IMG/VR virus record: IMGVR_UViG_3300032334_002567
Span: 310,001 to 374,000 of that record
Strand: one strand, 5' to 3'
DNA: 64,000 nt
Part shown: positions 233 through 12,513 of the stretch, one piece after another
Position numbering within the stretch: position 1 is the first letter of the stretch
Layout: each line of letters opens with the position of its first letter
Made by a program: the position numbers and the translations under genes
Notes under the pieces: model-generated
The model's database searches: none
What the model saw: the letters and a program-made list of their open reading frames with translations, nothing else
Told to the model about the DNA's origin: nothing

Positions 233-260
233 TTGACAAACTAATTGTACCCTGTAAAAT
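233..260 (+). promoter_or_regulatory. Sigma70-like promoter TTGACA-N16-TAAAAT straddling the first repeat copy
   Basis: TTGACA 233-238, TAAAAT 255-260. Confidence 0.45.
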
Positions 261-285
261 GGAAGCAACACCCCCCGGAGATCCA

Positions 286-558: not shown

Positions 559-564
559 GCTGTT

Positions 565-647
565 GCCGAAGTGGTGAAATTGGCATACACGCCAGACTCA
601 AAATCTGGTGCCCAAAAGGCGTGTGGGTTCGACCCCCACCTTCGGCA
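565..647 (+). tRNA. trnL: tRNA-Leu (anticodon CAA), CCA not encoded
   Basis: Acceptor stem GCCGAAG/CTTCGGC, anticodon arm CCAGA-CTCAAAA-TCTGG, long variable arm, T-loop GGTTCGACCC. Confidence 0.95.
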
Positions 648-672
648 TATTTAAATTGTACCCTAACAAAAC

Positions 673-747
673 GTTCCGATGGTGCCAACGCATTCGCTAG
701 GTGTTGGGCTTGGGTAAATGGTTGCCTTCTCAACCAGCCAACGGAAC
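673..747 (+). ncRNA. Putative three-way-junction RNA / structured 5' leader
   Basis: P1 673-683/737-747, P2 685-691/701-707, P3 719-724/731-736; begins 7 nt after the repeat core. Confidence 0.55.
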
Positions 748-777
748 ACTGATCTTAACCCCAACGGAGATAACCAA

Positions 778-1035
778 ATGGATAACTATGTTCATTTTGA
801 TGGTGAGTACGCTGATATTCCTGAGCTTACCCAAGGTGCTATCTTGCGGTATGTGCTTCAAAAGATTCCCCCCGGCAGTTTTCTGACGGCGGTTCTTTGC
901 AATGACCTCTATAACGCAACGGGTAGGGCAGATGCAAATAATCTGGTAGCTCTGCCTCTTATCGTGCGATGGTTTGCTAACAAGTGTCCGCATCTTTACG
1001 GTGCAGATAATATGTACAAGTACCTCGGCACCTAA
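778..1035 (+). CDS. Hypothetical phage protein (IPPGSFLTAVLCNDL motif)
   Basis: CCCCAACGGAG leader then ATG 778. Confidence 0.8.
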   Translation: MDNYVHFDGEYADIPELTQGAILRYVLQKIPPGSFLTAVLCNDLYNATGRADANNLVALPLIVRWFANKCPHLYGADNMYKYLGT

Positions 1036-1088
1036 ATAAAAATTGTACCCTATAAAGTTGTCCTTCTAACCCCCAACGGAGCTAACTT

Positions 1089-1400
1089 ATGCGTTATGCT
1101 GATTCCCGCTGTGAGATGATCGAAACTTACCAGCCTGATCACACCTACACCTTTGTCGGCCCGTGCATCGTGACCGGCAAGGAGCAGCGTGTCACGGTCA
1201 AAGCTCCCGACCTTTTCAAGTATCGGACGGGAGCATATGTTCAGGACGCTTTCCCCTACCTTGATGCCGCTGATCGTGAGTTTCTCATGACCGGCATGAG
1301 TGCAGAAGGTTGGCTTTTGACCTTCGGTGACGGTGCGGAAGACGATGAAGATTATGAAGATGATTGGGATGATGATGGAGAGCTTGGGGATCGGGATTGA
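1089..1400 (+). CDS. Hypothetical phage protein (QDAFPYL..DREFLMTG motif), acidic tail
   Basis: Repeat module and RBS upstream; stop abuts the next repeat. Confidence 0.8.
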   Translation: MRYADSRCEMIETYQPDHTYTFVGPCIVTGKEQRVTVKAPDLFKYRTGAYVQDAFPYLDAADREFLMTGMSAEGWLLTFGDGAEDDEDYEDDWDDDGELGDRD

Positions 1401-1440
1401 TTTGTACCCTAACTCTAACTCTACTCCCAAAGGATTATCT

Positions 1441-1902
1441 ATGACAGTTCACGATAAGATGTGCACACCTAGTGGCTTACAGGAATTGGCAAAAGAATGG
1501 TGGGACTGTCTTGTCTCTGATGAGCTAGCTTTGAGCCTAAGTACAGCTTATATAAAAGCAACTGAAGGATTCGAACCTGAAGCGGGCTCGTTCTCTGTTC
1601 CTTGTCTATGCTCCTCCGGCACAGGCCAGATTGTTTGGTTGAAAAACAGAATCAATGATTTGAATCTATTGCCCGTAGGCGAAGCACGAATGCACGACGA
1701 TATCCCAGCTGTTACAACAGCTGTATTGCATGTAGGTTTTTTGTCTGTGTTCGAAACAGAAGAAATGGTTTGCCGATTACGCAACGAGCCTCTACGTCAA
1801 AATTGTGAAAACCCAGCAAGGTCGAAGATGTTTGCGACAGCTCAAAAGCAGGATGTGGCTCCGATAGATCGTACTGCGTCAATCGTTTCTAGATCAAATT
1901 GA
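1441..1902 (+). CDS. Hypothetical protein
   Basis: AAGGA RBS then ATG 1441 after the repeat at 1400. Confidence 0.65.
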   Translation: MTVHDKMCTPSGLQELAKEWWDCLVSDELALSLSTAYIKATEGFEPEAGSFSVPCLCSSGTGQIVWLKNRINDLNLLPVGEARMHDDIPAVTTAVLHVGFLSVFETEEMVCRLRNEPLRQNCENPARSKMFATAQKQDVAPIDRTASIVSRSN

Positions 1903-2096
1903 TTTGGGAGTATCAAATGTCAATGAAAGTTTCTGAACTATCTGATTGGATCAAAACTCTTGAAAAAGATGATGTAGTCTGGATAGATGAGGGTGGACTA
2001 AACCTAGAAACTAAGGATGGAGCCTATCTGGAACTAGGCGGCAAAGTAGAGTTCTACGACGAAGATGATGACCCAAAAGGATTCTGGAGTAAATAA
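1899..2096 (+). CDS. Hypothetical protein
   Basis: Overlaps the upstream stop; start could be ATG 1917. Confidence 0.55.
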   Translation: MIWEYQMSMKVSELSDWIKTLEKDDVVWIDEGGLNLETKDGAYLELGGKVEFYDEDDDPKGFWSK

Positions 2097-2098
2097 CA

Positions 2099-2257
2099 AT
2101 GACTAAGCCTTACTTGGTGATCAAAAACAACTGCGCCATTGGTGTTGTTTTTGCTGGGAGTGAAACCGATGCACTCGTTATCGCTTGTGAAGCATATTGC
2201 GATGGCGTGACTGTAGAGTTGAGCCGTCAAAGTGGTCTAAGATCAGTAGGAGTATAA
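2099..2257 (+). CDS. Small hypothetical protein (52 aa)
   Basis: ATG 2099 to TAA 2257 fills the gap between adjacent genes. Confidence 0.5.
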   Translation: MTKPYLVIKNNCAIGVVFAGSETDALVIACEAYCDGVTVELSRQSGLRSVGV

Positions 2258-2260
2258 CCT

Positions 2261-2566
2261 ATGGAATGGATTAGTTTTTTCGGGCCACGTCGTCCAATCA
2301 ACGGACAAAAGATTTTCTATTACGGTGAGTGCATCGGTGTTTGGAGCGGAAATTACAGCTTAGACTGGAATGATCCAGTTAGCCCCCATCGGATAATTTG
2401 TGGGGAAAAAAGCAATGATGAAGTCTTAGCCGAATATGGTTTGAACAATCTGACTATGATTGTAGACCGTATGGATGCACCGTGGTGGATGCCTGACGAG
2501 GGACAGGAAAAGCCCAAAAAGCCAGAAACCGACTACCCAAAGGATTATCCAAGTCGAGAGGGCTAA
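2261..2566 (+). CDS. Hypothetical protein
   Basis: AGGAG RBS; ORF track. Confidence 0.7.
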   Translation: MEWISFFGPRRPINGQKIFYYGECIGVWSGNYSLDWNDPVSPHRIICGEKSNDEVLAEYGLNNLTMIVDRMDAPWWMPDEGQEKPKKPETDYPKDYPSREG

Positions 2567-2654
2567 ATAAAACCATTGTACCCTAAAAGGTCGTTACCCC
2601 ATTTGCACTTGAACGACTAATTCCTAAAATCTAAAATATAAGGGGAGAATAAAA

Positions 2655-2855
2655 ATGCAAAAGTTTATTTTTACAAACGTGAAGATCGAATACTTTGATT
2701 GTGAATGCTGCAAAGGTATGAAACCACCAGCAACCACAGTTTCAGAAGGGCCATTTGAGATAATGGCTCCAATTGGCATCAAACCAGAAAACATCGTAAA
2801 TGAGTTTTTTGGCGAGCCGGGACGAGTCATTGATTTCGAATGTCAAATTACCTAA
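2655..2855 (+). CDS. Hypothetical protein
   Basis: GGGGAG RBS; ORF track. Confidence 0.65.
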   Translation: MQKFIFTNVKIEYFDCECCKGMKPPATTVSEGPFEIMAPIGIKPENIVNEFFGEPGRVIDFECQIT

Positions 2856-2878
2856 TTCATCATTATTGACATTCAAGC

Positions 2879-2912
2879 AGACCCTTGAGATAAATCTCAG
2901 GGGTCTATTTTT
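2879..2912 (+). terminator. Rho-independent terminator
   Basis: AGACCCTTGAGA-TAAA-TCTCAGGGGTCT followed by a T-rich tract. Confidence 0.75.
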
Positions 2913-2935
2913 ATTTGTACCCTAAGGAGAATATC

Positions 2936-3229
2936 ATGTACAAACTATTTATCGATGATGTTCGTGACGCCCCGGATAGCCTCTGGACGGTGTGCAGATC
3001 ATCACATCAGGCTATTGAGCATATCAAGATTTATGGTATGCCAGCCCTTATCAGCTTTGACCATGACTTGGGCGGAGAAGACACCACCATGCTTTTCCTC
3101 CGTAGACTTGTGAACGAGCTTTGGGACGGTAAAACACCACCACCCAATTACAGAGTTCATTCTGCGAATCCTGTTGGCAGCGAAAATATCAAAAGCTTTA
3201 TGGAGAGTTGGAAAAAGTCGATTGAATAA
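2936..3229 (+). CDS. Cyclic-phosphate-processing receiver (cREC-type) domain protein
   Basis: KLFIDDVR, ISFDHDLG and VHSANPVG motifs. Confidence 0.8.
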   Translation: MYKLFIDDVRDAPDSLWTVCRSSHQAIEHIKIYGMPALISFDHDLGGEDTTMLFLRRLVNELWDGKTPPPNYRVHSANPVGSENIKSFMESWKKSIE

Positions 3230-3338
3230 ACTCTAAGGAGAGAGAAATGTCTAAGTTGACTCTTGGCGATAAGATTCTTTTCACTGCGTGTTTTATTGCT
3301 GGCTGTTTTGTTGTTTATCTAATCAACTAAGGAATAAA

Positions 3339-3605
3339 ATGACTGAGCTTTTTACCGACATTGCTATTGTTGTTATGTATCTTGGAACTGCTTTGGCGCT
3401 TTGTGCATTTGTTGGAATTGTTCTTCGGGTTGGTGATTTGGGATTTTGGTGCTTTGGGAAACTTGACGAATATCTGCAAGATAGGCATTTTGAGAAGCTC
3501 AGGAAGTCTTGGGAAAAGAATTGTACCCTAAAAGATTGTTCTAAACCCCAACGGAGTTCTTATGTCAATTCATATAACCAACTTTGTTCGACGCCAGACT
3601 GCTGA
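3339..3605 (+). CDS. Hypothetical membrane protein whose 3' end reads through the repeat at 3519
   Basis: N-terminal hydrophobic helix; AAGGA RBS. Confidence 0.55.
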   Translation: MTELFTDIAIVVMYLGTALALCAFVGIVLRVGDLGFWCFGKLDEYLQDRHFEKLRKSWEKNCTLKDCSKPQRSSYVNSYNQLCSTPDC

Positions 3606-4119
3606 AAGCCATTTCTCGCATTGGACGATCAGTGACGAGGAACTTATCTTTTGTGTTAGCCAGAACATGGACAGGGCTCATAAGGGATACCGGGATGGAG
3701 TTATTCTTGTCCCGATTAGTCCCGAAGGCTTTTTCAGTGCTGTGGCTGAATTGCAGATCAATGACACTCTGAATGGTTCTTTTTCTTGCCGTCGAGCTGG
3801 CGAGGAACCACGAAAAAGTGTCTTTATGATTGGTGAGAAGGTTCCCGCCCAAACAGTCTGGGTTGTTTTATACGCTCATCACGTTCTTGCTGAAAAGAAT
3901 GAAAACGAGAGCGATGCCGATTATGAAATTGTGAGCATCAACACCAGTCCTAGTGTTGATCAAAAGCCTGCTCCTATGCCGCCGGAAACGCTTATTGCTA
4001 ATCACTTTGAGCTTTCTGGGGGAACTGCAACAAATATGACCGATAGCGAGTTTGTTGCATCGCTGCGTGAAAGTGTGATGTATTGGAAAGATAAAGTTCA
4101 GGTTCAGCCTAACCTCTAA
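3562..4119 (+). CDS. DUF3228-family protein
   Basis: GYRDGVILVP, RRAGEEPR, VVLY.HHVL.E.NE, YEIVSIN and PM.PET....GGT motifs. Confidence 0.75.
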   Translation: MSIHITNFVRRQTAESHFSHWTISDEELIFCVSQNMDRAHKGYRDGVILVPISPEGFFSAVAELQINDTLNGSFSCRRAGEEPRKSVFMIGEKVPAQTVWVVLYAHHVLAEKNENESDADYEIVSINTSPSVDQKPAPMPPETLIANHFELSGGTATNMTDSEFVASLRESVMYWKDKVQVQPNL

Positions 4120-4128
4120 AGGAATAAC

Positions 4129-4401
4129 ATGAGAAGCACAACATTGCCTCTTTTTGAAAAGTGGTACGCAACAGCAACACCAGAGCAAATTGAGTTTGTT
4201 GATCAGGTTTATGCTATTTGTGAAGAAAACTACGAAAAGGGTGGAGATAGAATTGTTGAGTGCTATGGGCCAGAGGAAATCATCGAAGATTTCAATACAA
4301 TAGCTGAAGTTCGAGAGCACTGCAATTTGATGGTTGAGCAAGAGCTAAATGCCCGTTGGGGCGAAGATGATGACCCAGAGTTGAGTCGTGGCAAGTGGTG
4401 A
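4129..4401 (+). CDS. Hypothetical acidic protein
   Basis: AAAGGA RBS; ORF track. Confidence 0.75.
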   Translation: MRSTTLPLFEKWYATATPEQIEFVDQVYAICEENYEKGGDRIVECYGPEEIIEDFNTIAEVREHCNLMVEQELNARWGEDDDPELSRGKW

Positions 4402-4459
4402 GTTCTAAATAAATTGTACCCTAACAGGTTGTTCCGAATCACCCCTAACGGAGACAATC

Positions 4460-5023
4460 ATGTCTTACGAGAACGCTCCCCAGACGATTATGCTGGCGAC
4501 CAATTGCTGCTGCTGTGGTCGTCCGCTTTGCGATGCCATCTCTGTTGAGCTTGGTATCGGCCCGGAGTGCCGTGGTGGAAACAACGGTACTCTGACCGAG
4601 GAGCAGCGGCGTGAGTGCAACCAGCTTACACATGCTGCTGCCCTTGCGGCTCAGGAAGGAAAGATCGAAAACGTCCGATGGTGTTCGGAAGCTATTCGTG
4701 AGCTTGGCTTGCCAGAGCTTGCGGATAAGGTGGCTCACCGCTTTGTGAATGCAGAGCGGACGGCGAAGATCACCATTCGGATGGAGGACGGTATGCTCCT
4801 CGTCACTACGCCTTACAAGCGTTCGATGAAGGATGAGTTTACCGCCGCTTGGCGTAATGTCCCCGGTCGGCGGTGGGTTAGCCGGAAGCGGTGCAATGCG
4901 GTGCCTGTGAGCAGCAAGCCCCACTTGTGGGCTTTGCTCAAGCGGTTCTTCCCCGGCGAGTTCGGCATGGGCCCGAATGGGGTGTTCAGGGTTCCTGCCG
5001 AAAGCAAGAACGCCGCCGCATAG
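4460..5023 (+). CDS. DUF6011-like Zn-finger protein, C-terminus ...KNAAA
   Basis: C..CGRPL.D.IS.ELGIGPEC motif. Confidence 0.75.
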   Translation: MSYENAPQTIMLATNCCCCGRPLCDAISVELGIGPECRGGNNGTLTEEQRRECNQLTHAAALAAQEGKIENVRWCSEAIRELGLPELADKVAHRFVNAERTAKITIRMEDGMLLVTTPYKRSMKDEFTAAWRNVPGRRWVSRKRCNAVPVSSKPHLWALLKRFFPGEFGMGPNGVFRVPAESKNAAA

Positions 5024-5027
5024 CATC

Positions 5028-5068
5028 CAAACGGGGCGGGAGTGAAAATAATCCTCCCGCCCCGTTTG
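5028..5068 (+). repeat. GC hairpin (GGGGCGGG family), no U-tract
   Basis: 15-bp perfect stem CAAACGGGGCGGGAG/CTCCCGCCCCGTTTG. Confidence 0.8.
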
Positions 5069-5107
5069 TGATAAGTGATAAATCCCTTTACTCTTCTTTT
5101 GTGAATA

Positions 5108-5281
5108 ATGGAAAATATAAATTCTGTAGATACGATCAAAGAAATTGCAAGCCGTTTTTCTTGTATTCCCTTGAATGATATGACTTTTGCCGAAAAGGAC
5201 GTAGCAAATCTTTTGCTTGAAAAAGGATTTCTAACAATCGGTATAGATCATTGCGGTAAAAGAGTTTTTCATACTCTATAA
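5108..5281 (+). CDS. Small AT-rich hypothetical protein (57 aa)
   Basis: ATG 5108 to TAA 5281, ending just before a repeat copy. Confidence 0.5.
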   Translation: MENINSVDTIKEIASRFSCIPLNDMTFAEKDVANLLLEKGFLTIGIDHCGKRVFHTL

Positions 5282-5329
5282 AATAATTGTACCCTAGAAA
5301 GTTGTTCGATCCCACTCAAAGGAGTTGAC

Positions 5330-5455
5330 ATGGATCCCAACTACGACTTCTTTCTGGACTTCACGCAGGACTTGCAGAACGACGCAGAGTATAACGCTTG
5401 GCTCGACGAGCAGGAGCTTTACTCGCAACAGCAGGAAATGCCCGAAGACTTCTAA
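5330..5455 (+). CDS. Small acidic protein (41 aa)
   Basis: AAAGGAG RBS after the repeat at 5285. Confidence 0.65.
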   Translation: MDPNYDFFLDFTQDLQNDAEYNAWLDEQELYSQQQEMPEDF

Positions 5456-5615
5456 TTTCCTTCTAACCAACGGAGCTTTACCAGTGGTGTAAATACGAGG
5501 TTTTGGCGACAAGAGCCTCATCCAAGTCGCCCTAGGGCAGTCAGGCCACTGTCCTAGATTGTTTTTATTGTACCCTAGTAAGTTGTTCAATCCCAACCAT
5601 CAACCGGAGCTAACC

Positions 5616-5771
5616 ATGACCAGCTTTCTTCTGACTGTGAGCAGCTTTCTCGTTTCTGCCGCCCAAACGCCCTATCTGGACGGCTACTTTGCTGGTGCTG
5701 TGGCTATCGCCGTAACGATTGCGGTGAATGCTATTGTCATTGACTGCATCTACCGCTTCGGTACAAAGTAA
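5616..5771 (+). CDS. Small membrane protein
   Basis: CCGGAG RBS; hydrophobic segment; stop overlaps the next repeat. Confidence 0.65.
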   Translation: MTSFLLTVSSFLVSAAQTPYLDGYFAGAVAIAVTIAVNAIVIDCIYRFGTK

Positions 5772-5819
5772 TTTGTACCCTATAGAAGTGTTCAATCCTA
5801 ACCCCAACGGAGTTTCACG

Positions 5820-6164
5820 ATGAAGTGCATTAGCAATACTTTGGTGATTACTGCCGATATTTGGGAAGATCCGGGTGACTACCCTAATTCCCTTGCCGGT
5901 GGCCCGCTTCCCAGCCACTCTTACATTGAATCCAGCGGTGAACTGGTGCTGGAAGCTGAGAATAACGAGGAACTCGAAAGTTTCGACGCCCTAAACGATT
6001 GGTTCTCTGACTGGATTCATTGTGGTGCAGAGGCCAGCACTATAGGTGCATACGTTGATGTCCCCAGTTATTGGCATATTGACTGGGAGTTCAAAGTGGA
6101 GGGAAACATTCTCACCGTGACGGTCGGTGATGATTGTGAAGCTAACGAGCCAGATTATGATTAA
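5820..6164 (+). CDS. Hypothetical acidic protein
   Basis: Repeat module upstream; stop overlaps the next repeat. Confidence 0.8.
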   Translation: MKCISNTLVITADIWEDPGDYPNSLAGGPLPSHSYIESSGELVLEAENNEELESFDALNDWFSDWIHCGAEASTIGAYVDVPSYWHIDWEFKVEGNILTVTVGDDCEANEPDYD

Positions 6165-6211
6165 TTGTACCCTAACAGGTTGTTCTGATTTCCTCTAAAA
6201 CGGAGAGACAA

Positions 6212-6370
6212 ATGAACTGTTGGAAAAAGGCGTGGAATTGCTGCCTCAAAAACAAGGGCAGTGCAAAGGGCCGCAAAGAACTCAAGCGGGCCAACCATCG
6301 TGCCAACCGCCGTGTCGGTAAGAAGCTGGATAATGTTCACATTCGTCTGAACGGCTGGGACGTTATCTAA
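6212..6370 (+). CDS. Small basic protein (52 aa, MNCWKKAW...)
   Basis: CGGAG RBS; stop abuts the repeat at 6371. Confidence 0.7.
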   Translation: MNCWKKAWNCCLKNKGSAKGRKELKRANHRANRRVGKKLDNVHIRLNGWDVI

Positions 6371-6413
6371 AATTGTACCCTAACAAGTTGTTCGATCCTC
6401 ACCCCAACGGAGA

Positions 6414-6728
6414 ATGACCATGGCAATGTGCGAAGACTTCCCTTGTTGCGGACACGAGCCGGGATGCTGCCCCCGGTTCGATGAGAGCGGTCGGCAGTTG
6501 GATATGGTCTGCACTTGCGGTGCCAGACTGCCGGTTCACAATCGGTACAGTATTTGCGACCGTTGCCTTCGCATGGACGAAGACGGTTGCTATGACGACG
6601 ATTGTGAAACCTACGATGACGATGACTGCGAGGAAGACGACTGTGACGATGCCGATTGCGGTATCGAAGATCAGTTCCTCGACAGTTTCATGGAAGACCG
6701 CCTCAGTGGCGGCTTTTGTGAAGAATGA
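6414..6728 (+). CDS. Cys-rich (Zn-binding?) protein with acidic tail
   Basis: CEDFPCCGH, CTCG and C..C motifs. Confidence 0.75.
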   Translation: MTMAMCEDFPCCGHEPGCCPRFDESGRQLDMVCTCGARLPVHNRYSICDRCLRMDEDGCYDDDCETYDDDDCEEDDCDDADCGIEDQFLDSFMEDRLSGGFCEE

Positions 6729-6781
6729 AACACGGTTGCCGGGGCGGGTTGAGACTAACTCCCCGCCCCGGCCCGTTGGGG
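6729..6781 (+). repeat. AACACGG-GC hairpin-CCGTTGGGG element (copy A)
   Basis: Near-identical to the elements at 9689 and 11937. Confidence 0.85.
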
Positions 6782-6803
6782 CTTTCAAACAAGGAGACAA
6801 GTA

Positions 6804-7019
6804 ATGTCTGTATATTTCAACAAGCAAATGGCTAATCTTATCAACGTCTATGTCAAGTGTCCTACCAGTGGTCGAACGCTGGACGCAGATAGGCACGATG
6901 ACAAAGTATTGTGCAACTGCCCAGAGGCTATGAGCCGGGGCGGTACCCATATTGTTTCAAAGTGTGAACCGTCAACGGTCGAACAGTTCATGGTAGAAAA
7001 CAATTTTACAGAGAACTAA
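6804..7019 (+). CDS. Small Cys-containing hypothetical protein
   Basis: AGGAG RBS; ORF track. Confidence 0.7.
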   Translation: MSVYFNKQMANLINVYVKCPTSGRTLDADRHDDKVLCNCPEAMSRGGTHIVSKCEPSTVEQFMVENNFTEN

Positions 7020-7028
7020 AACCCACCT

Positions 7029-7066
7029 TAGGGTACAAATAAAGTAATTAAAATAATTGTACCCTA
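7029..7066. repeat. Inverted pair TAGGGTACAA-N18-TTGTACCCTA
   Basis: Direct reading of the sequence. Confidence 0.9.
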
Positions 7067-7102
7067 GAAAAGTGTTCGATAACCCCCAACGGAGAATCCC
7101 TC

Positions 7103-7333
7103 ATGCCAGTCGAAGTTCACACCAGCGGTTCTGTTTCTTATACCGGTGAAGACGGCGTAGCTCTTTTCCGTCTCATTACTCTTCACTCTGCCCTGCGCCT
7201 TCAGGCCACCACCGGCATGAAAGCGTCAAGGATCAGTGCTGTGGCTTGTGCCAAGCGACTTGGCTATACAGGCCGCACCGCAAAGGCTCTGCTTGCAGAC
7301 ATCGAACGGAAGCACCCTGAGCTGAAGAAGTAA
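7103..7333 (+). CDS. Hypothetical protein
   Basis: Repeat module upstream; stop overlaps the next repeat. Confidence 0.8.
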   Translation: MPVEVHTSGSVSYTGEDGVALFRLITLHSALRLQATTGMKASRISAVACAKRLGYTGRTAKALLADIERKHPELKK

Positions 7334-7378
7334 ATTGTACCCTAGTTAATCGTTCGACACCCCCAACAAGAGGATGCA

Positions 7379-7582
7379 ATGAGTAACATCGAAGACAAGA
7401 TGGAAGCAATCGAAAAGTGGCGCAATGACAATTTGTGCTTTCTCGACGGCCAGCCTGCAAAGATTGTGGGTTGGAAAGAAAAGTTTCCAATCGTGAGCCA
7501 AATCGACGGCCCTCTTGCTTTTGAGTGGTCGTGGGCCGCTGTCAACAGGATCATGTCCGGTGATCGACAGTTCAAGAGCTAG
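7379..7582 (+). CDS. Hypothetical protein
   Basis: Repeat module and GAGGA RBS. Confidence 0.8.
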   Translation: MSNIEDKMEAIEKWRNDNLCFLDGQPAKIVGWKEKFPIVSQIDGPLAFEWSWAAVNRIMSGDRQFKS

Positions 7583-7624
7583 ATCATTTGTACCCTATTA
7601 AAGCGTTCAACACCCCAACGGAGA

Positions 7625-7957
7625 ATGATCATGGAATACACCGAAGCCCTCAAAGTTCTTGGCAAGCGTGATTCGAAGAAAGTCGGAAACAACACCTACA
7701 TGATCCGGCTGGGTTCGGACATCGGTATTCGACTTCACAACACCGTTGTGGTGACCATCCATCCCGACAATACCTACACACTCAATAGCGGTGGATGGCA
7801 GACAGTGACAACAAAGGATCGGATCAACCAGTATTCACCGGTTCGTGTGTATCAATCAAAAAGCGTTTGGTATGTCGGTCAAGGCGAGCTGTTTTACGAC
7901 AACATGAAAGTCGGTGTCGTTTGCGGTGAGCCGCTAGCTTTAGGAATTGTACCCTAG
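7625..7957 (+). CDS. Hypothetical phage protein (TLNSGGW.T.TTK.RIN motif); stop TAG lies inside the repeat
   Basis: Repeat module upstream; 3' end reads GGAATTGTACCCTAG. Confidence 0.8.
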   Translation: MIMEYTEALKVLGKRDSKKVGNNTYMIRLGSDIGIRLHNTVVVTIHPDNTYTLNSGGWQTVTTKDRINQYSPVRVYQSKSVWYVGQGELFYDNMKVGVVCGEPLALGIVP

Positions 7958-7996
7958 TAGGTTGTGTAACCACCCCCAACGGAGTTGTGAAAAAAC

Positions 7997-8278
7997 ATGA
8001 TGAACTACAGCGGTTGTAACAGCTGGATCTACATCTACGCCATCGGTGGCAATTGGAACCCCGGCCCCAGCGGTGACGAGTTCGTGGGCTGTGCCTACGA
8101 CGCCTCCACTGCCCTCAGCCTGCTCGACTTGGTCGAGTTGAAGGGTGGCTATGCCGTCAGCCTGCACGGTGACAACCTGCATACGCTCAATGCCGTCAGC
8201 GGCGAGTGTGGTGTGCGGGAAGCCCGTATCATGTTCAAGCTCTGGAAAGAGAAAGAGGCGGTCGTTGTCGCTGGGTAA
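7997..8278 (+). CDS. Hypothetical protein
   Basis: Repeat module upstream. Confidence 0.75.
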   Translation: MMNYSGCNSWIYIYAIGGNWNPGPSGDEFVGCAYDASTALSLLDLVELKGGYAVSLHGDNLHTLNAVSGECGVREARIMFKLWKEKEAVVVAG

Positions 8279-8331
8279 CAATAAATAAATTGTACCCTAA
8301 AAGAGTGTTCGATCCCAACGGAGAAGCGATC

Positions 8332-8475
8332 ATGGAAATTAAATTCAACTTCAAAACACGTCAGTACGACGTTTGCATCACATTCTTCGACGGCAGAACC
8401 CCCATAAATGTTTGCTCTTTCTACAAAGAGTCGGATGCTCGCGCCTACGTCATGGTTCACAATGTCAAGTGTTAG
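8332..8475 (+). CDS. Small hypothetical protein (47 aa)
   Basis: CCAACGGAGAAGCGATCATG leader. Confidence 0.7.
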   Translation: MEIKFNFKTRQYDVCITFFDGRTPINVCSFYKESDARAYVMVHNVKC

Positions 8476-8534
8476 ATTCAATAAATAAATTGTACCCTGA
8501 CAGAGTGTTCGATCCACCCCAACGGAGTTTTGAA

Positions 8535-8687
8535 ATGACCGAAAACGAAATCAATGTTCTGGAAGAGGCCGCATCGCACATTCGAAACGATGCTTACAAC
8601 TGCGATAGCAGTCTGGATCGCAAGTATTTCGAAAAGCTTGCCGATAAGATCGAAGACATTATCGCCAAGCATAATCAAAGCAAATAA
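8535..8687 (+). CDS. Small hypothetical protein (50 aa)
   Basis: Repeat module upstream; stop overlaps the next repeat. Confidence 0.7.
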   Translation: MTENEINVLEEAASHIRNDAYNCDSSLDRKYFEKLADKIEDIIAKHNQSK

Positions 8688-8736
8688 ATTGTACCCTAGA
8701 TGATTGTTCGATTCACACCCCAACGGAGAAGCGATC

Positions 8737-9117
8737 ATGGCAAGCTGGTACACCGTCAGCGAGAGCAAGATTCAGTGGGCTCCCATCGGCACCCGTGTTC
8801 TGAAGACTGGCGAGACTAAGCCGAAGTTTTCCCGGATCGGCGTCCGTATCAATATGGTGGACGGTAGCTGGTGGTTCCACAGCTTCAAGCACGATAGCTG
8901 GACGCAACACTATCCCCGGAAGCAGGCCACCGACAAGCTGGGACGGCCCATTTTCGAGGATGGTCAGCCGCTCCTGCGACCGGAACGCAAGGAAACCTAC
9001 CGCAACTGGATGGCGGTTGTGAGAGAGTTCGGCACTCGACTGCCCGCTCTGGTTGTCGCTCTGGAAAACGGTCACGCCGAAGCTCTGCTAGCCGAAGCAG
9101 AGAAAACGGCAGCGTAA
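8737..9117 (+). CDS. Hypothetical protein, C-terminus ...EKTAA
   Basis: Leader CCAACGGAGAAGCGATCATGG, shared with the gene at 8332. Confidence 0.8.
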   Translation: MASWYTVSESKIQWAPIGTRVLKTGETKPKFSRIGVRINMVDGSWWFHSFKHDSWTQHYPRKQATDKLGRPIFEDGQPLLRPERKETYRNWMAVVREFGTRLPALVVALENGHAEALLAEAEKTAA

Positions 9118-9190
9118 AACGTGTGCTAGGGGCGGCAAGGCTCTACGGCCAAAAGCCGCGAAACTGCTAGCCGCCCCTAGCCCGTTGGGG
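9118..9190 (+). repeat. GC hairpin-CCGTTGGGG element (divergent copy D)
   Basis: GCTAGGGGCGGC ... GCCGCCCCTAGC stem, then CCGTTGGGG. Confidence 0.75.
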
Positions 9191-9253
9191 TACTTATAAA
9201 TAATTGTACCCTAAAAGTGTGTTGCGAACGCCCCTCTTTTTCAAGGATGAAAA

Positions 9254-9424
9254 ATGTACGCTCTGACGATGATCATAGGTTTTCTTGGCTACGGGTTCGG
9301 GTACGAGGGTTGTGAAAAAGGAAAGATATATTTCGGCGTGTATACCCCCAAAGCCGAATATGGTTGGGTCATGACAGAAAAAGACGTTTATCTGGATACC
9401 GTGTACCAGAAAACTTCTAAATAA
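9254..9424 (+). CDS. Small hypothetical protein (56 aa)
   Basis: AAGGA RBS; stop overlaps the next repeat. Confidence 0.6.
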   Translation: MYALTMIIGFLGYGFGYEGCEKGKIYFGVYTPKAEYGWVMTEKDVYLDTVYQKTSK

Positions 9425-9465
9425 ATTGTACCCTAGTTGATTGTTCGATCCAACCCCAACGGAGA

Positions 9466-9690
9466 ATGACAATGCCAAATATCAACTGGTTCGACGGTCA
9501 GAATGCGGTTGGCAAGTACGTTATGGAACTCATGTACGACGACGGTAGCGTCAGCTACATGAAAAATGAGAACTACGAGCAGATTTGCCACTACTACCGG
9601 CTTGCTTTGGAAATGTCGGAAGTGGTGGGTGCGACCATCTACAACCCAAAGTGGCAAGTAGTTTGCTCGACAGCACGGGCCGCAGCGTGA
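9466..9690 (+). CDS. Hypothetical protein, C-terminus ...ARAAA
   Basis: Repeat module upstream. Confidence 0.8.
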   Translation: MTMPNINWFDGQNAVGKYVMELMYDDGSVSYMKNENYEQICHYYRLALEMSEVVGATIYNPKWQVVCSTARAAA

Positions 9691-9770
9691 ACACGGTTGC
9701 CTGGGCGGGTTGAGACAAAACTCCCCGCCCTGGCCTGTTAGGGTATTTATATTGTACCCTATAGAAGTGT
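9678..9770 (+). repeat. About 90-bp linker (Ala-Ala-Ala-stop, hairpin, repeat core), near-identical to 11926..12024
   Basis: GGCCGCAGCGTGAACACGGTTGCC(T/G)GGGCGGGT...TTTATATTGTACCCTATAGAAGTGT in both copies. Confidence 0.9.
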
Positions 9771-9796
9771 CAGCCACCCCAAACACAGGAGCCAAT

Positions 9797-9958
9797 ATGA
9801 GCAATAACGAAAAACCGTACTGCTTCGAAGAAGCCCGTTTCAAGCGTGAAATGGAATACGTGGCTCGTAAGCTCAAAGAGGCGTTGGAACTCAAGGAATA
9901 CGCCAAACAACTGGCAAAAGAAAAAGAACAAAAAGAGAAAGAGGAAAGCCGGGACTAA
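9797..9958 (+). CDS. Small charged coiled-coil protein
   Basis: AGGAG RBS after the repeat at 9750. Confidence 0.7.
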   Translation: MSNNEKPYCFEEARFKREMEYVARKLKEALELKEYAKQLAKEKEQKEKEESRD

Positions 9959-9987
9959 CACCCCCGGTTCTCTTTTTTAGTCGGCCA

Positions 9988-10033
9988 TAGGGTACAAATA
10001 AAATAAAAAGGGATATACAATAATTGTACCCTA
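9988..10033. repeat. Inverted pair TAGGGTACAA-N26-TTGTACCCTA
   Basis: Direct reading of the sequence. Confidence 0.9.
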
Positions 10034-10040
10034 TAACAGT

Positions 10041-10155
10041 GTGAATGATTGCGAGGCCGCACCATCGGCACTACTGTCCGGTTGCAAACGGCAGTAACTC
10101 GCGGGAGCGGTATGCCGAAAGGCAGCGAGTGGTGCACCCCATCGCAATCGTTCAC
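10041..10155 (+). ncRNA. Structured ncRNA (~115 nt) occupying its own unit of the array
   Basis: 14-bp closing stem 10041-10054/10142-10155; GCACCA/TGGTGC; hairpin 10072-10096; CTCGC/GCGAG; TGCC-GAAA-GGCA; no RBS or ORF between two repeat copies. Confidence 0.75.
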
Positions 10156-10209
10156 AACAAAACAATTGTACCCTAGAAAAGTGTTCGATTCACCCCAACG
10201 GAGACGATC

Positions 10210-10545
10210 ATGACTTTCGTCAACCTGACCCCGCACACGATCACTGTGGTTCTCGACAATACCAGCGTGCAATTCCCGGCTTCTGGCAACGTGGCCCGTG
10301 TTTCCACCAGTCGAGTCTCTGGCCCCACGCTAACCGTCTACGGCGATTCTGTCGGTATCCAGACTTCCCGTGTCGAGTTCGGGGCAGTCGAGGGGCTTCC
10401 CGATCCCGTGGACGGCACGGTTTACATTGTGAGCGGAATGGTCGCAGCCCGTGTCAACCGGCCCGACGTTTTCGCTCCCGGTGAACTGGTGCGTGATGCA
10501 AACGGCCAGCCCACCGGCTGCAAGGGTCTGACTTGCAGCGGTTGA
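10210..10545 (+). CDS. Hypothetical phage protein (VNLTPH.I N-terminus)
   Basis: Repeat module upstream; N-terminal motif I recall from phage hypothetical proteins. Confidence 0.8.
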   Translation: MTFVNLTPHTITVVLDNTSVQFPASGNVARVSTSRVSGPTLTVYGDSVGIQTSRVEFGAVEGLPDPVDGTVYIVSGMVAARVNRPDVFAPGELVRDANGQPTGCKGLTCSG

Positions 10546-10602
10546 TTATTATAATTGTACCCTATAGAAGTGTTCGATCCCAACCCCAACGGAGACTCAC
10601 GA

Positions 10603-11043
10603 ATGAACGACATTCTTCTCGCCGCCCTGACCAGCTGCTTCAGCAAGATGGCAAAGGCCGCTGGCCCGATTGCCCCCGGCCTGCACCAGGTCGATGAAAC
10701 GATCACGATGCGGGTCAAGGGCGAGGTGCTGAAGTCGGACGACGAAACCTACGTCCCGACGATTGCGATTCCCGTCAAGGCCGTGATGGCTACGTTGCTC
10801 CCCCGGTTGGGTGCGACACGGGAGGCTGCGATGGAAACGCTTATCGCCGCCATGACTGAAGCGGTCAATCTGGACAAGCTGGGCGATGAAACGCTCAAAG
10901 CCCGGATGAAAGACGTTGACGCGGCTTTCGAGCATGTGCAGAACGTGCTCGACGCCCTCCCGCCAAAGACACGGACGGGAAAGACGAACGTGGACGTGAC
11001 CCTTGTGGTCGCTCCCACGCCCGCCGTCGCACTTGTCCCGTGA
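10603..11043 (+). CDS. Hypothetical protein
   Basis: CCCCAACGGAG then ATG 10603. Confidence 0.8.
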   Translation: MNDILLAALTSCFSKMAKAAGPIAPGLHQVDETITMRVKGEVLKSDDETYVPTIAIPVKAVMATLLPRLGATREAAMETLIAAMTEAVNLDKLGDETLKARMKDVDAAFEHVQNVLDALPPKTRTGKTNVDVTLVVAPTPAVALVP

Positions 11044-11045
11044 CG

Positions 11046-11098
11046 ATACGGCATCGGGGGCGGGAGGAACTAACAACTCCCGCCCCCACTAGCCGTTT
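11046..11098 (+). repeat. GC hairpin (GGGGCGGGAG/CTCCCGCCCC; copy E)
   Basis: Same stem family as 5028 and 6729. Confidence 0.75.
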
Positions 11099-11152
11099 GT
11101 GCAATTGTACCCTATTGGTTTGTGTGATTCGTCCCTTTACTTTGGAGCAGTT

Positions 11153-11335
11153 ATGGAAGCGAAAATCGAGAACGGCTTTCTGGTTCTGCGAGTCCCGATG
11201 AATGCAACGCCGATTCGTTCGTCTACCGGCAAGACTTTGGTGGTTGCCTCGACCTATGGCAACAAGGCAACCGAAGTGACGGTGGACGGCAAGACGGTCA
11301 CCGTGGGCGTCAACGCCTATATCAAGGCCGCTTGA
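11153..11335 (+). CDS. Small conserved beta-rich protein (S.TGKTLVVAST.GN), C-terminus ...YIKAA
   Basis: GGAG RBS; ATG 11153. Confidence 0.8.
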   Translation: MEAKIENGFLVLRVPMNATPIRSSTGKTLVVASTYGNKATEVTVDGKTVTVGVNAYIKAA

Positions 11336-11356
11336 CCCCAACGGTTCGGATCGAAA

Positions 11357-11393
11357 GCCGGAGGGGACAGCCACCCCCTCCGGTTCTTTTTTT
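11357..11393 (+). terminator. Rho-independent terminator, repeated at 12470
   Basis: CCGGAGGGG-ACAGCCAC-CCCCTCCGG followed by TTCTTTTTTT. Confidence 0.85.
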
Positions 11394-11402
11394 AGCCCGC
11401 CA

Positions 11403-11439
11403 TAGGGTACAAATAAATATATAAAATAATTGTACCCTA
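11403..11439. repeat. Inverted pair TAGGGTACAA-N17-TTGTACCCTA
   Basis: Direct reading of the sequence. Confidence 0.9.
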
Positions 11440-11482
11440 GATAAGTGTTCGATCTAACCTTCCCTCTCACTTGGAGTCAACG

Positions 11483-11551
11483 ATGATCGCTCTCGTTCTC
11501 GCGTTTGGCCTTGGTTTCGCCGCCATTTCTGCCGTTTACTGGGTGCTGTAA
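11483..11551 (+). CDS. 22-aa single-helix membrane peptide (MIALVLAFGLGFAAISAVYWVL)
   Basis: TTGGAG RBS inside its own repeat-bounded unit. Confidence 0.55.
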   Translation: MIALVLAFGLGFAAISAVYWVL

Positions 11552-11644
11552 AGCTCCCAGTCTAACACCTGAGTGATTAGGGTATAAAGTAATTGTACCC
11601 TAGATAAGTGTTCGATCCGATCCCACCCCAACCGGAGACGCACG

Positions 11645-11938
11645 ATGAAGAACGCTTTCGACCGCACGAACAGCATGAAGAACAAGCTCAAGGCCGATTG
11701 GAACCGGATGGTGGGGGAACTGGTGTCCATCCCCGCCGGTTGCCAGATTCACAGCCTGACGCTCACGCAGACCAACTTCGGTTGGGTCTACGCCCGGAAG
11801 CACGGCCAGCCCGTGCCGGTCGCCCAGTTGCGGAACGCCGCCGTGACGAAGGGTTACTGTATCCTGCACGACGGCCCCAACTTCCGGGTGGCCCTCCCGC
11901 CGAAGCGGAACGGGGAGCCGGTCAAGGCCGCAGCGTGA
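11645..11938 (+). CDS. Hypothetical protein, C-terminus ...VKAAA
   Basis: Repeat module upstream. Confidence 0.8.
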   Translation: MKNAFDRTNSMKNKLKADWNRMVGELVSIPAGCQIHSLTLTQTNFGWVYARKHGQPVPVAQLRNAAVTKGYCILHDGPNFRVALPPKRNGEPVKAAA

Positions 11939-12024
11939 ACACGGTTGCCGGGGCGGGTCGAGACTAACTCCCCGCCCCGGCCCCGTTGGGGTACTTGTAT
12001 TTATATTGTACCCTATAGAAGTGT
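11926..12024 (+). repeat. Linker copy C (Ala-Ala-Ala-stop, hairpin, repeat core)
   Basis: Near-identical to 9678..9770. Confidence 0.9.
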
Positions 12025-12054
12025 TCGATCCCCACCCCCAACCGGAGCCGCCCC

Positions 12055-12444: not shown

Positions 12445-12469
12445 AATTGTACCCTATCAAGCACACCGA

Positions 12470-12504
12470 CCGGAGGGGACAGCCAACCCTCCGGCTTTCT
12501 TTTC
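12470..12504 (+). terminator. Rho-independent terminator, paralogue of 11357
   Basis: CCGGAGGG-GACAGCCAA-CCCTCCGG followed by CTTTCTTTT. Confidence 0.8.
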
Positions 12505-12513
12505 AGCCCGCCA

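What the first reader, a model, noticed from the sequence alone, without database searches (positions are those of the whole stretch)
654..12030. Invariant 7-nt spacing from the core to a G start suggests a non-sigma70 promoter with a predictable +1
Seen: in nearly all complete copies exactly 7 nt separate CCCTA from GT, e.g. 5285 GAAAGTT, 7055 GAAAAGT, 7333 GTTAATC, 8687 GATGATT, 10553 TAGAAGT. The spacer sequence varies while its length does not. Two independent RNA structures (673-747 and 10041-10155) have their 5' closing strand starting exactly on that G. There is usually no -35/-10 pair. Inference: the core spans about -19 to -8 and transcription starts at GT(TCGA), read by a phage-specific polymerase or sigma factor.
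Basis: partly seen in the sequence, partly recalled or inferred. Interest (0 to 1): 0.72.

Follow-up and report, generated by a model that had tools for sequence, protein, structure and literature searches.

The report
Phage-specific promoter repeated before many genes
A giant lake-water phage places the same 12-letter signal before about 70 small genes, at a fixed distance from where RNA most likely starts; it is very likely a phage-specific promoter, a known kind of element with a new sequence, and the protein that reads it is not identified.

Summary
The window is part of a 381-kb jumbo-phage contig. TGTACCCT(A) is the most over-represented word in that genome. There are 72 same-strand copies in a 50-kb, GC-enriched block that ends at window 12,638; 33 of them lie in the window.

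A pyrimidine-purine step, usually TG, lies at positions 16/17 counted from the first T, so 7 nt follow CCCTA. It is present in 85-87% of copies. "Invariant" is therefore too strong.

The same core and spacing occur in 77 non-identical copies from related lake phages. Their genes are only 28-74% identical in protein and their order is shuffled. More distant relatives carry GGTACGCT or GGTACGYC with the same spacing.

Four indirect lines point to a start at position 17:
- the pyrimidine-purine rule at -1/+1;
- the ribosome-binding site AAGGAG piling up at exactly 17 in short leaders;
- two genes without such a site whose ATG sits at 17;
- closing helices of conserved RNAs that begin at 16/17 and show compensatory changes.

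No -35 element is conserved. No phage RNA polymerase gene was found. Three sigma-like genes exist. My verdict is a phage-specific, single-element promoter: a new member of a known kind.

The parts
238..12638 (+). Window part of the promoter block: 33 forward copies of the element. Each spans about 26 bp: A/T-rich -24..-17, TGTACCCTA -16..-8, and a pyrimidine-purine step at -1/+1.
   Evidence: First T of TGTACCCT at 246, 657, 1044, 1403, 2577, 2916, 3522, 4415, 5288, 5569, 5774, 6166, 6374, 7058, 7336, 7589, 7948, 8291, 8491, 8690, 9205, 9427, 9753, 10025, 10167, 10556, 11106, 11431, 11594, 12007, 12448, 12544, 12621. The predicted +1 is that coordinate plus 16. The block continues upstream of the window to genome position 272,016.
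10548..10579 (+). Representative full copy: A/T tract, TTGTACCCTA, spacer TAGAAG, T-G-T with predicted +1 G at 10572, then leader GTTCGATCC..CCCCAACGGAG and ATG at 10603.
649..674 (+). Copy directly after tRNA-Leu; predicted +1 G at 673 is the first base of the structured leader RNA.
673..747 (+). Structured RNA in the 5' leader of the ORF that starts at 778. It has a conserved 61-nt core and a closing helix GUUCCG.UGG/CCA.CGGAAC.
   Evidence: Fold z = -1.6 only; no Rfam family. The core is 96.7% identical in L136, L141, L143 and L145. The closing helix is replaced there by AUAGUGG/CCACUAU or UGUGG/CCACA.
10017..10042 (+). Copy driving the 115-nt structured RNA; predicted +1 G at 10041.
10041..10155 (+). 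Structured non-coding RNA between two promoter copies, with no T-run terminator.
   Evidence: MFE -58.3 kcal/mol, z = -5.8, 0 of 200 shuffles as stable. No Rfam family. The L139 homolog keeps the outer helix from position 17, with an A-U to G-C change.
2908..2938 (+). Exception copy: AAGGAG sits at positions 9-14 and ATG at 21, so a start at 17 would leave a 4-nt leader without a ribosome-binding site.
   Evidence: A terminator-like hairpin lies at 2879-2906 just upstream.
233..263 (+). Copy with CCCTG, embedded in the spacer of a near-consensus sigma-70-type promoter (TTGACA-16-TAAAAT).
7029..7040 (-). Inverted copy of the core, 20 bp upstream of the forward copy at 7058.
9988..9999 (-). Inverted copy after a hairpin, 28 bp upstream of the forward copy at 10025.
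11403..11414 (-). Inverted copy after terminator 11356-11385, 19 bp upstream of the forward copy at 11431.
11578..11587 (-). Partial inverted copy (TTATACCCT), 7 bp upstream of the forward copy at 11594.
12514..12525 (-). Inverted copy with one mismatch (TTGTACCCA), 21 bp upstream of the forward copy at 12544.
12440..12638 (+). Last three copies at the end of the block. None is followed by an ORF; the first runs into a hairpin plus T-rich run after about 20 nt.
564..648 (+). tRNA-Leu(CAA) immediately upstream of a promoter copy.
   Evidence: Elsewhere in the genome, tRNA-Gln and tRNA-Arg are likewise followed by copies.
20421..21332 (-). Sigma C: 303-aa sigma-70-family protein (regions 2 and 4), one of three candidate readers.
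   Evidence: Pfam Sigma70_r4 9e-9 and r2 2e-4; PHROG 351; nearest solved relatives are RpoD, SigA and SigB.
21359..21386 (-). Near-consensus sigma-70-type promoter (TTGTCA, 16 bp, TATAAT) upstream of sigma C.
   Evidence: The same promoter stands before the 84%-identical ortholog in L054.

Best explanation
The element is a promoter class specific to this phage lineage. It has a single compact recognition element, about 26 bp long. An A/T-rich stretch is followed by TTGTACCCTA, which would span about -17 to -8. Six variable bases follow, then a pyrimidine at -1 and a purine at +1, usually G, often continuing as GTTCGAT.

It drives about 70 mostly tiny genes, several structured RNAs and, in relatives, tRNAs. 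All point in one direction within a 50-kb GC-enriched block.

Most likely host core RNA polymerase reads it when carrying a phage-encoded sigma-70-family factor. There are three candidates:
- sigma B, genome 197,511-198,389;
- sigma C, window 20421-21332;
- a 96-aa protein with sigma region 2 only, genome 162,412-162,702.

In sigma-70 terms, TACCCT fits the TAnnnT pattern of a -10 hexamer. It is the only place in the core with an A to flip out. The start would then lie 9 bp downstream of that hexamer, focused there by the purine-any base-pyrimidine-purine pattern at positions 14-17.

Shown here: the motif, its spacing, its conservation and its position relative to genes. Inferred: the exact start site, and which protein reads it.

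Because the same sequence flanks each small gene, the copies probably also act as points of homologous recombination that shuffle gene cassettes between related phages.
For: - Abundance and strand bias: TGTACCCTA is the most over-represented 9-mer of the genome, 71 copies against 0.67 expected, with 71 forward and 4 reverse. 72 copies of the 8-base core TGTACCCT lie in one block that is 41-48% GC against about 35% elsewhere.
- Position: each copy sits 20-65 nt before a ribosome-binding site plus ATG, or before a structured RNA.
- Fixed step: a pyrimidine-purine step at 16/17 in 85-87% of copies in three separate sets, 0-6% in adjacent registers, independent of the shared leader.
- Short leaders: the first AAGGAG after the core starts exactly at 17 in 6 of the 22 copies that have one, and never at 10-14.
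- Leaderless candidates: two ORFs without a ribosome-binding site have their ATG exactly at 17 (genome 304,404; L143:1144).
- RNA helices begin at 16/17 in this phage, in L136 and in L139, with different but complementary sequences.
- Conservation: related lake phages share only 28-74% protein identity and have shuffled gene order, yet carry the identical core in 77 non-identical copies, 37 of them in 12.4 kb.
- More distant relatives carry GGTACGCT or GGTACGYC with a purine at 17 in 14 of 14 copies.
- No conserved -35, and no excess of sigma-70-type sites.
- Polymerase search: no hit for PF00562 or PF00623, only a spurious PF00940 hit, and none among the 20 ORFs over 450 aa that were scanned, all outside the window; the larger window ORFs gave no polymerase hit either. 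Three sigma region-2 hits were found.
- Both full-length sigmas keep KFSTY but have changed the residues equivalent to sigma-70 W434, Q437 and T440, which read the upstream edge of the -10 element.
- The promoter-plus-leader pattern gave one chance-level hit in genomes of 185,579 bacterial and archaeal species.
Against: - No transcript 5' ends are available; no RNA run could be listed.
- One copy (window 2916) has its ribosome-binding site inside positions 9-14. Two ORFs without such a site start at positions 11 and 15 in a relative. Neither fits a start at 17.
- A start 9 bp after a -10-like hexamer is at the long end of what sigma-70 holoenzymes do.
- Both full-length phage sigmas keep four of the five sigma-70 residues that read a TTGACA -35 element (KERxRQ against sigma-70's RERxRQ), yet the promoters have no -35.
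- Sigma C orthologs also occur in relatives whose equivalent genes use ordinary -35/-10 promoters.
- The contig is only 79% complete, and a very divergent polymerase would escape Pfam.
- The attempt to model sigma with promoter DNA was not folded and gives no evidence either way.
Confidence: 0.6

Rival explanations
1. The host's own primary sigma reads the element as an unusual extended -10 promoter. TG directly abuts a TACCCT hexamer, and no phage factor is needed. This would make the genes true early genes.
For: TACCCT fits TAnnnT, a TG lies just upstream, and an A/T-rich tract upstream resembles an UP element. In a relative, TGGTACAAT (a canonical TGnTAnnnT) stands before a gene, and half of the L050 copies read TGGTACGCT. 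The block looks like an early region of many small genes.
Against: The TG is one base too close to the hexamer for the canonical extended -10. The hexamer has CCC where A/T is preferred. A 9-12-base core identical in all ~150 non-identical copies is not what housekeeping promoters look like. The phage also has ordinary TTGACA-16-TATAAT promoters, so the host enzyme probably prefers those. The core differs between related phage lineages: CCCT, CGCT, CGYC. No sequenced bacterial genome shows the pattern repeatedly.
Confidence: 0.15
2. An unrecognised phage RNA polymerase reads the element. It could be single-subunit or a very divergent multisubunit enzyme, perhaps carried in the virion. It would be encoded in the missing 21% of the genome or in an unannotated ORF.
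For: A contiguous, nearly invariant element from about -24 to +7 with a G start resembles promoters of T7-like enzymes. Invariant early promoters are also typical of virion polymerases of phiKZ- and AR9-type jumbo phages (PMC7598289, PMC5312081). Several large ORFs have no annotation. The contig is 79% complete.
Against: No match to PF00562 or PF00623. The only PF00940 match (E = 0.011) lies in a low-complexity Lys/Arg/Gln stretch of a 4404-aa Ala/Gly/Leu-rich protein. That protein sits before the baseplate genes and looks like a tape measure; it has no PDB, Pfam or PHROG support as a polymerase. The phage invests in three sigma-like genes, which only make sense with the host core enzyme.
Confidence: 0.12
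3. The repeat is not primarily a promoter. It would be a cassette boundary or recombination site, an operator for a dimeric regulator, or an RNA processing signal.
For: Gene order between copies is shuffled among relatives. 18% of copies (34 of 188) are preceded by an inverted copy 7-31 bp upstream, giving a palindrome suited to a dimer or an RNA hairpin. About a quarter follow a strong hairpin, as in promoter-terminator cassettes.
Against: Strict co-orientation with genes, a fixed distance to a pyrimidine-purine step, the ribosome-binding-site pile-up at 17, and use before RNA genes are all promoter properties. Most copies have no inverted partner. A recombination role is compatible with, and in T4-like phages derives from, promoter identity (PMC2839356, PMC4122927).
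Confidence: 0.08

Closest known systems
Promoters of phage-encoded sigma factors with one -10-region element: phiEco32 gp36 (AATGTA centred at -11.5; PMC12276001) and T4 late promoters read by gp55 (TATAAATA; from my own knowledge)
   Same: One short, highly conserved element close to the start, with no conserved -35. Many copies across a temporal gene class. The phage encodes sigma-family proteins. The left half, AAT(T)GTA, even resembles the phiEco32 motif.
   Different: The element here is longer (about 12 invariant bases plus an A/T tract). It lies about 4 bp further upstream if +1 is position 17. Its sequence is different. The sigma that reads it is not identified, and the two full-length candidates are truncated group-1/2-type sigmas rather than gp36- or gp55-like proteins.
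PeSL (promoter-early stem-loop) cassettes of T4-like phages (PMC2839356, PMC4122927)
   Same: A conserved promoter, sometimes with a preceding stem-loop, is repeated between small genes of unknown function in a plastic region. Gene order is shuffled between relatives while the repeat stays the same.
   Different: PeSL promoters are host sigma-70 early promoters; here the motif is not of the -35/-10 type. Only about a quarter of copies follow a strong hairpin. The density is higher, up to one copy per 335 bp.
T7-type single-subunit RNA polymerase promoters (from my own knowledge)
   Same: A contiguous conserved block running up to the start, G at +1, a conserved initially transcribed sequence, and dozens of near-identical copies.
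   Different: No single-subunit polymerase gene was found. Six variable bases separate the core from the start.
Ribosomal RNA P1-type sigma-70 promoters with an 8-nt discriminator (from my own knowledge)
   Same: If TACCCT is the -10-like hexamer, the start lies 9 bp downstream, as at rrnB P1.
   Different: There is no -35 hexamer and a non-canonical hexamer; whether the open complex is scrunched is untested.

Membership tests
Canonical sigma-70 (-35/-10) promoter | TTGACA-like hexamer 16-18 bp upstream of a TATAAT-like hexamer | tested here: not met
   No information content upstream of the A/T tract. Sigma-70-type sites number 17 against 14.3 expected in 1-13,500, and only one overlaps a copy.
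Canonical sigma-70 (-35/-10) promoter | -10 hexamer of form TAnnnT, with the start about 7 bp downstream | tested here: inconclusive
   TACCCT fits TAnnnT, but the conserved pyrimidine-purine step is 9 bp downstream of it. There are no 5'-end data.
Extended -10 promoter (TGnTATAAT) | TG separated by one base from the hexamer | tested here: not met
   In TTGTACCCT the TG abuts TACCCT with no intervening base. Some copies in L050 do read TGGTACGCT.
Single-element promoters of phage sigma factors (T4 gp55, phiEco32 gp36 type) | One conserved element near -10, no -35, repeated before a class of phage genes | tested here: met
Single-element promoters of phage sigma factors (T4 gp55, phiEco32 gp36 type) | The phage encodes a sigma-family protein | tested here: met
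   Three Sigma70_r2 matches in the genome; Pfam, PHROG and PDB support.
Single-element promoters of phage sigma factors (T4 gp55, phiEco32 gp36 type) | That sigma, with host core enzyme, initiates at the element | not testable with these tools
   The complex prediction was not folded, and no RNA data could be listed.
T7-like single-subunit polymerase promoter | Genome encodes a T7-like RNA polymerase | tested here: not met
   The only PF00940 match is 12.2 bits, E = 0.011, in a low-complexity stretch of a tape-measure-like ORF. The contig is 79% complete.
Jumbo-phage multisubunit polymerase promoters (phiKZ, AR9) | Genome encodes beta and beta-prime homologs | tested here: not met
   PF00562 and PF00623 gave no candidate at E <= 1, while all 14 control genomes matched. 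No polymerase hit in any large ORF scanned.
N4 virion-polymerase hairpin promoter | Short hairpin (5-7 bp stem, 3-nt loop) centred near -12 | tested here: not met
   The core contains only the 4-bp palindrome GTAC and no stem-loop.
PeSL promoter-terminator cassettes | Repeated promoter between small variable genes, with shuffling between relatives | tested here: met
PeSL promoter-terminator cassettes | Stem-loop terminator directly before each promoter | tested here: inconclusive
   26% of copies have an upstream fold of -15 kcal/mol or better, against 14% of control positions. A clear hairpin plus inverted copy is seen in 18%.
PeSL promoter-terminator cassettes | The promoter is a host sigma-70 early promoter | tested here: not met

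The most novel reading that the evidence does not exclude
A whole lineage of freshwater jumbo phages may use a previously undescribed promoter grammar: a GTAC-centred single element, with the start focused 13 bp after the A of GTAC. The same near-invariant promoters would double as recombination handles that shuffle hundreds of one-gene cassettes inside a GC-rich island. That would be a sigma-70-independent counterpart of the PeSL system, at far higher density.
Probability: 0.2. Interest if true: 0.65.

Novelty: new member of a known kind. Interest (0 to 1): 0.45.

Why it matters
If the prediction holds, transcription units can be annotated base-by-base in an uncultured 381-kb phage and its relatives: about 70 start sites here, and 37 in 12 kb of a relative.

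It defines a gene class, probably early or middle host-takeover genes. It flags several new small RNAs that the promoter drives.

It also offers a clean test system for how a truncated primary-type phage sigma, or a minimal sigma, redirects host polymerase without a -35 element. The 26-bp element and three candidate factors are in hand.

The shuffled cassettes between identical promoters extend the PeSL idea of promoter-mediated gene exchange beyond T4-like phages.

The finding is not surprising in kind, because phage-specific promoter classes are well known.

Tried and rejected
- Virion RNA polymerase in the 4404-aa ORF (window 38024-51238). A weak PF00940 match turned out to lie in a low-complexity stretch. 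The protein is Ala/Gly/Leu-rich with membrane-like segments and sits before the baseplate genes. It has no Pfam, PHROG or PDB support as a polymerase. Rejected; it is probably a tape measure.
- RNA-seq start-site mapping. Only lake-water DNA metagenomes hold the sequence, and no RNA run could be listed.
- Rfam. Neither structured RNA matches a family.
- Other genome-wide motifs. The second most enriched words are a coding tandem repeat at the contig end and a 35-bp repeat array. Neither is a second promoter class.
- Excess of sigma-70-type promoters genome-wide. None: 109 forward sites against 132-157 in shuffles. A handful of near-perfect sites do exist.
- IMG/VR relatives. A motif scan and sigma searches returned only a second contig of the same phage plus very distant sigmas.
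- Matching motif variants to sigma C region 2.4 variants. The residues differ between lineages, but this cannot be separated from phylogeny with eight sequences.
- Sigma-DNA complex prediction. It was not folded by the tool, so it gives no evidence.
- Bacterial genomes. One chance-level hit.
- Literature. The motif string appears only in unrelated primer lists.
- TTGTAC as a -35 hexamer with a -10 element 17 bp downstream. No conserved hexamer lies there.

Full report
**Where the window lies.** The window is positions 310,001-374,000 of a 381,443-bp linear virus record. CheckV rates it 79% complete, and its GC content is 36.5%. It encodes:
- a T4-type large terminase, a DnaE-type polymerase, a DnaB-type helicase and ribonucleotide reductase;
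- PrkA and SpoVR;
- baseplate proteins;
- ten tRNAs.

It is a jumbo tailed phage. Only freshwater and lake DNA metagenomes hold the sequence.

**Checking the observation.** CCCTA-N7-GT occurs 28 times in the window against 4.45 expected. Of these, 26 lie on the + strand between 661 and 12,024.

TTGTACCCT occurs 33 times on the + strand between 245 and 12,628. There are also three exact inverted copies and two with one mismatch.

In the whole genome, TGTACCCTA is the most over-represented 9-mer: 71 copies against 0.67 expected, and only 4 on the other strand. Seventy-two copies of the 8-base core TGTACCCT form one block from genome position 272,016 to window 12,638. That block is 41-48% GC, while the rest of the genome is about 35%.

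Positions are counted with the T of TGTACCCT as 1. The logo is an A/T-rich stretch at -8 to -2, T at -1, the invariant TGTACCCT, A at 9, six variable bases, then T16 (54/76), G17 (52/76; purine 70/76) and T18 (48/76). Nothing is conserved further upstream.

The pyrimidine-purine step at 16/17 is present in 87% of the 39 copies upstream of the window, 85% of the 33 window copies and 87% of 77 copies from relatives. In the adjacent registers it is present in 0-6%. It also holds in the 116 copies that lack the shared GTTCGA leader: purine at 17 in 105, p = 6e-19.

So the spacing is real and is not explained by duplication of a promoter-plus-leader cassette. It is strong rather than invariant.

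**Context of each copy.** Nearly every copy is followed within 20-65 nt by a ribosome-binding site and the ATG of an ORF. Most of these ORFs are 40-190 codons. Larger ORFs in the upstream part of the block include a RuvB-like ATPase, MoxR-type ATPases, DUF2201 and VWA proteins, a WGR-domain DNA ligase and UvdE. Three tRNA genes are each followed directly by a copy. Sigma-70-type hexamer pairs are not enriched.

**Evidence for the start site.** No RNA run could be listed, so I looked for constraints in the sequence. Five were found.

1. The conserved pyrimidine(-1)-purine(+1) step is the classical start-site signature. It is flanked by a purine at 14 and a pyrimidine at 16, which disfavour starts at 15 and 16.
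2. In promoters with very short leaders, the first AAGGAG begins exactly at position 17 in five copies of this genome and one of a relative. It never begins at 10-14. The ribosome-binding site seems to move up to the start of the transcript but not past it.
3. Two ORFs without a ribosome-binding site have their ATG exactly at 17 (genome 304,404, 80 codons; L143:1144, 178 codons). This is what leaderless mRNAs would require.
4. The 115-nt RNA at 10041-10155 folds with z = -5.8, and its outer helix starts at 10040/10041. Its homolog in L139 keeps an outer helix from position 17 with an A-U to G-C change.
5. The RNA at 673-747 is weak by energy (z = -1.6), but its 61-nt core is 96.7% identical in four related contigs whose coding DNA is about 70-78% identical. 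The closing helix is GUUCCG.UGG in this phage, AUAGUGG in L141, L143 and L145, and UGUGG in L136, each with a matching partner strand. In L136 the helix again starts at 16/17 of a promoter copy.

**Counter-examples.** In window copy 2916 the AAGGAG lies at positions 9-14 and the ATG at 21. In L143, two ORFs without a ribosome-binding site start at positions 11 and 15.

I put the probability that most transcripts start at position 17, give or take one base, at about 0.75-0.8.

**Comparative evidence.** IMG/VR holds only a second contig of the same phage.

A scan of JGI metagenomes with the promoter-plus-leader pattern found seven related contigs from other lakes. Their proteins are 28-74% identical to those of this phage and are arranged in a different order. 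Yet TGTACCCT is identical in 77 non-identical copies. Density reaches 37 copies in 12.4 kb, and the logo continues as TGTACCCTATA. In these relatives the element also stands before tRNA genes.

Orthologs of sigma C (41-51% identical) mark more distant jumbo phages. In L050 the intergenic motif is GGTACGCT. In L049 and L057 it is GGTACGYC. Position 17 is a purine in 14 of 14 copies, and in one orthologous pair GGAGG starts at 17. In L055, L056 and L047 the equivalent genes instead have ordinary promoters of the TTGACA or TTTACAAG type with TAYAAT-like -10 hexamers.

The GTAC-centred element is therefore a lineage-variable, phage-borne signal with conserved geometry. The pattern is absent from bacterial genomes apart from one chance-level hit.

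**Who reads it.** PF00562 and PF00623 gave nothing in the genome. The single PF00940 match (E = 0.011) lies in a Lys/Arg/Gln-rich stretch of the 4404-aa ORF. That ORF has tape-measure composition and position, and no other support as a polymerase. None of the 20 ORFs over 450 aa that were scanned, all outside the window, is a polymerase, and the larger window ORFs gave no polymerase hit either.

There are three sigma region-2 matches:
- sigma C, window 20421-21332;
- sigma B, genome 197,511-198,389, 30% identical to sigma C, with hundreds of homologs on huge contigs;
- a stand-alone 96-aa region-2-only protein.

The nearest solved relatives of sigma B and sigma C are primary and group-2 sigmas. 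Both keep KFSTY. Both have changed the residues equivalent to sigma-70 W434, Q437 and T440. Both keep (K)ERxRQ in region 4.2.

Sigma C lies behind TTGTCA-16-TATAAT, so the host holoenzyme probably makes it. The complex prediction was not folded.

I therefore commit to host core polymerase plus a phage sigma-family factor, at about 0.55-0.6, with the individual factor left open.

**Proposed mechanism.** In sigma-70 terms, TACCCT fits TAnnnT, and A4 is the only adenine in the core available for flipping. The start would then be 9 bp downstream of the hexamer, as at ribosomal RNA P1 promoters, and focused by the surrounding bases. This step is inference.

**Known relatives of this kind.** The closest promoter types are the single-element promoters of phage sigmas. 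The phiEco32 gp36 promoters have AATGTA centred at -11.5 (PMC12276001). T4 late promoters are the other example.

The closest genome architecture is the PeSL promoter-stem-loop cassette of T4-like phages, which mediates shuffling of small genes (PMC2839356, PMC4122927). Here 18% of copies have an inverted core copy 7-31 bp upstream, usually after a hairpin, and 26% follow a strong fold. Unlike PeSLs, the promoter is not of the sigma-70 type.

No paper in the library mentions the motif as a promoter.

**Verdict.** This is a new member of a known kind: a phage-specific promoter class. Interest is moderate, because of its extreme density, its conservation across shuffled cassettes, and the unresolved reader.

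Noticed in passing
L051:3496-4200 and L051:5439-5545 (genome 273,496-274,200 and 275,439-275,545); also genome 171,243-171,285: An array of about 20 head-to-tail 35-bp units. Each unit has two conserved boxes (GAGTGAACCA and GATTTTACA) separated by 8-9 variable bases. The array ends at a promoter copy. Three more units follow a perfect TTGACA-16-TGgTATAAT promoter. It is not CRISPR-like; it could be iterons, a partition site or a transcribed repeat RNA.
   Followed up: partly
window 1-12,638 and genome 270,001-323,000: The promoter block is a compositional island, 41-48% GC (up to 57% at window 10-12 kb) against about 35% in the rest of the phage.
   Followed up: partly
window 7029-7040, 9988-9999, 11403-11414, 11578-11587, 12514-12525; L136, L139, L142, L143: Inverted copies of the core (TAGGGTACAA) lie 7-31 bp upstream of 18% of forward copies, usually just after a GC-rich hairpin, both here and in relatives. 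They lack the pyrimidine-purine step at 16/17. Their role is unknown: divergent promoter, operator, or hairpin in read-through RNA.
   Followed up: partly
window 673-747; L136, L141:777-837, L143:8144-8204, L145:9896-9956; divergent copy near L143:536-568: A conserved 61-nt RNA core (two hairpins inside a variable closing helix), 96.7% identical between phages whose genes are about 70-78% identical. It lies next to tRNA genes in this phage and in relatives. No Rfam family matches.
   Followed up: partly
window 17-23 nt after each core, e.g. 10572-10600: About a fifth of the non-identical copies (33 of 149), here and in relatives, share nearly the whole 5' leader, GTTCGAT(A/C)(A/C)CCCCAACGGAG. 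Its first bases resemble a tRNA T-loop sequence. It may be an initially transcribed promoter part or a translation signal.
   Followed up: no
window 38024-51238: A 4404-aa Ala/Gly/Leu-rich ORF with membrane-like segments lies directly before the baseplate genes. It is probably an exceptionally long tape measure protein.
   Followed up: partly
window 12699-12767: Three copies of a 23-bp tandem repeat (CGTTGCAAAATCCCGGTTACAAA) lie just past the end of the promoter block.
   Followed up: no
L047:6940-7194, L055:1540-1797, L056:3729-3992: Related jumbo phages encode an 84-87-aa protein matching the C-terminal domain of the RNA polymerase alpha subunit, next to a ClpX-like gene. I did not search for it in this genome.
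   Followed up: no
genome 162,412-162,702 (L010:1432-1722): A stand-alone 96-aa protein consists only of sigma region 2 and gives the best Sigma70_r2 score in the genome. It may be a minimal sigma or a competitor for the core enzyme.
   Followed up: partly
genome 379,200-381,443: The contig ends in a long coding tandem repeat of 15- and 30-bp units (TACCACC...). This probably explains why the assembly stops there.
   Followed up: no
window 30477-31964 (-): A 495-aa protein has a poly(A) polymerase / CCA-adding enzyme head domain (PF01743, 1e-20) in a phage that carries ten tRNAs.
   Followed up: no
L143:3384-3450, L143:7389-7460, L142:1633-1700: In relatives the same promoter stands a few to a few dozen bases before tRNA-like sequences. 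This shows that it also drives RNA genes.
   Followed up: no
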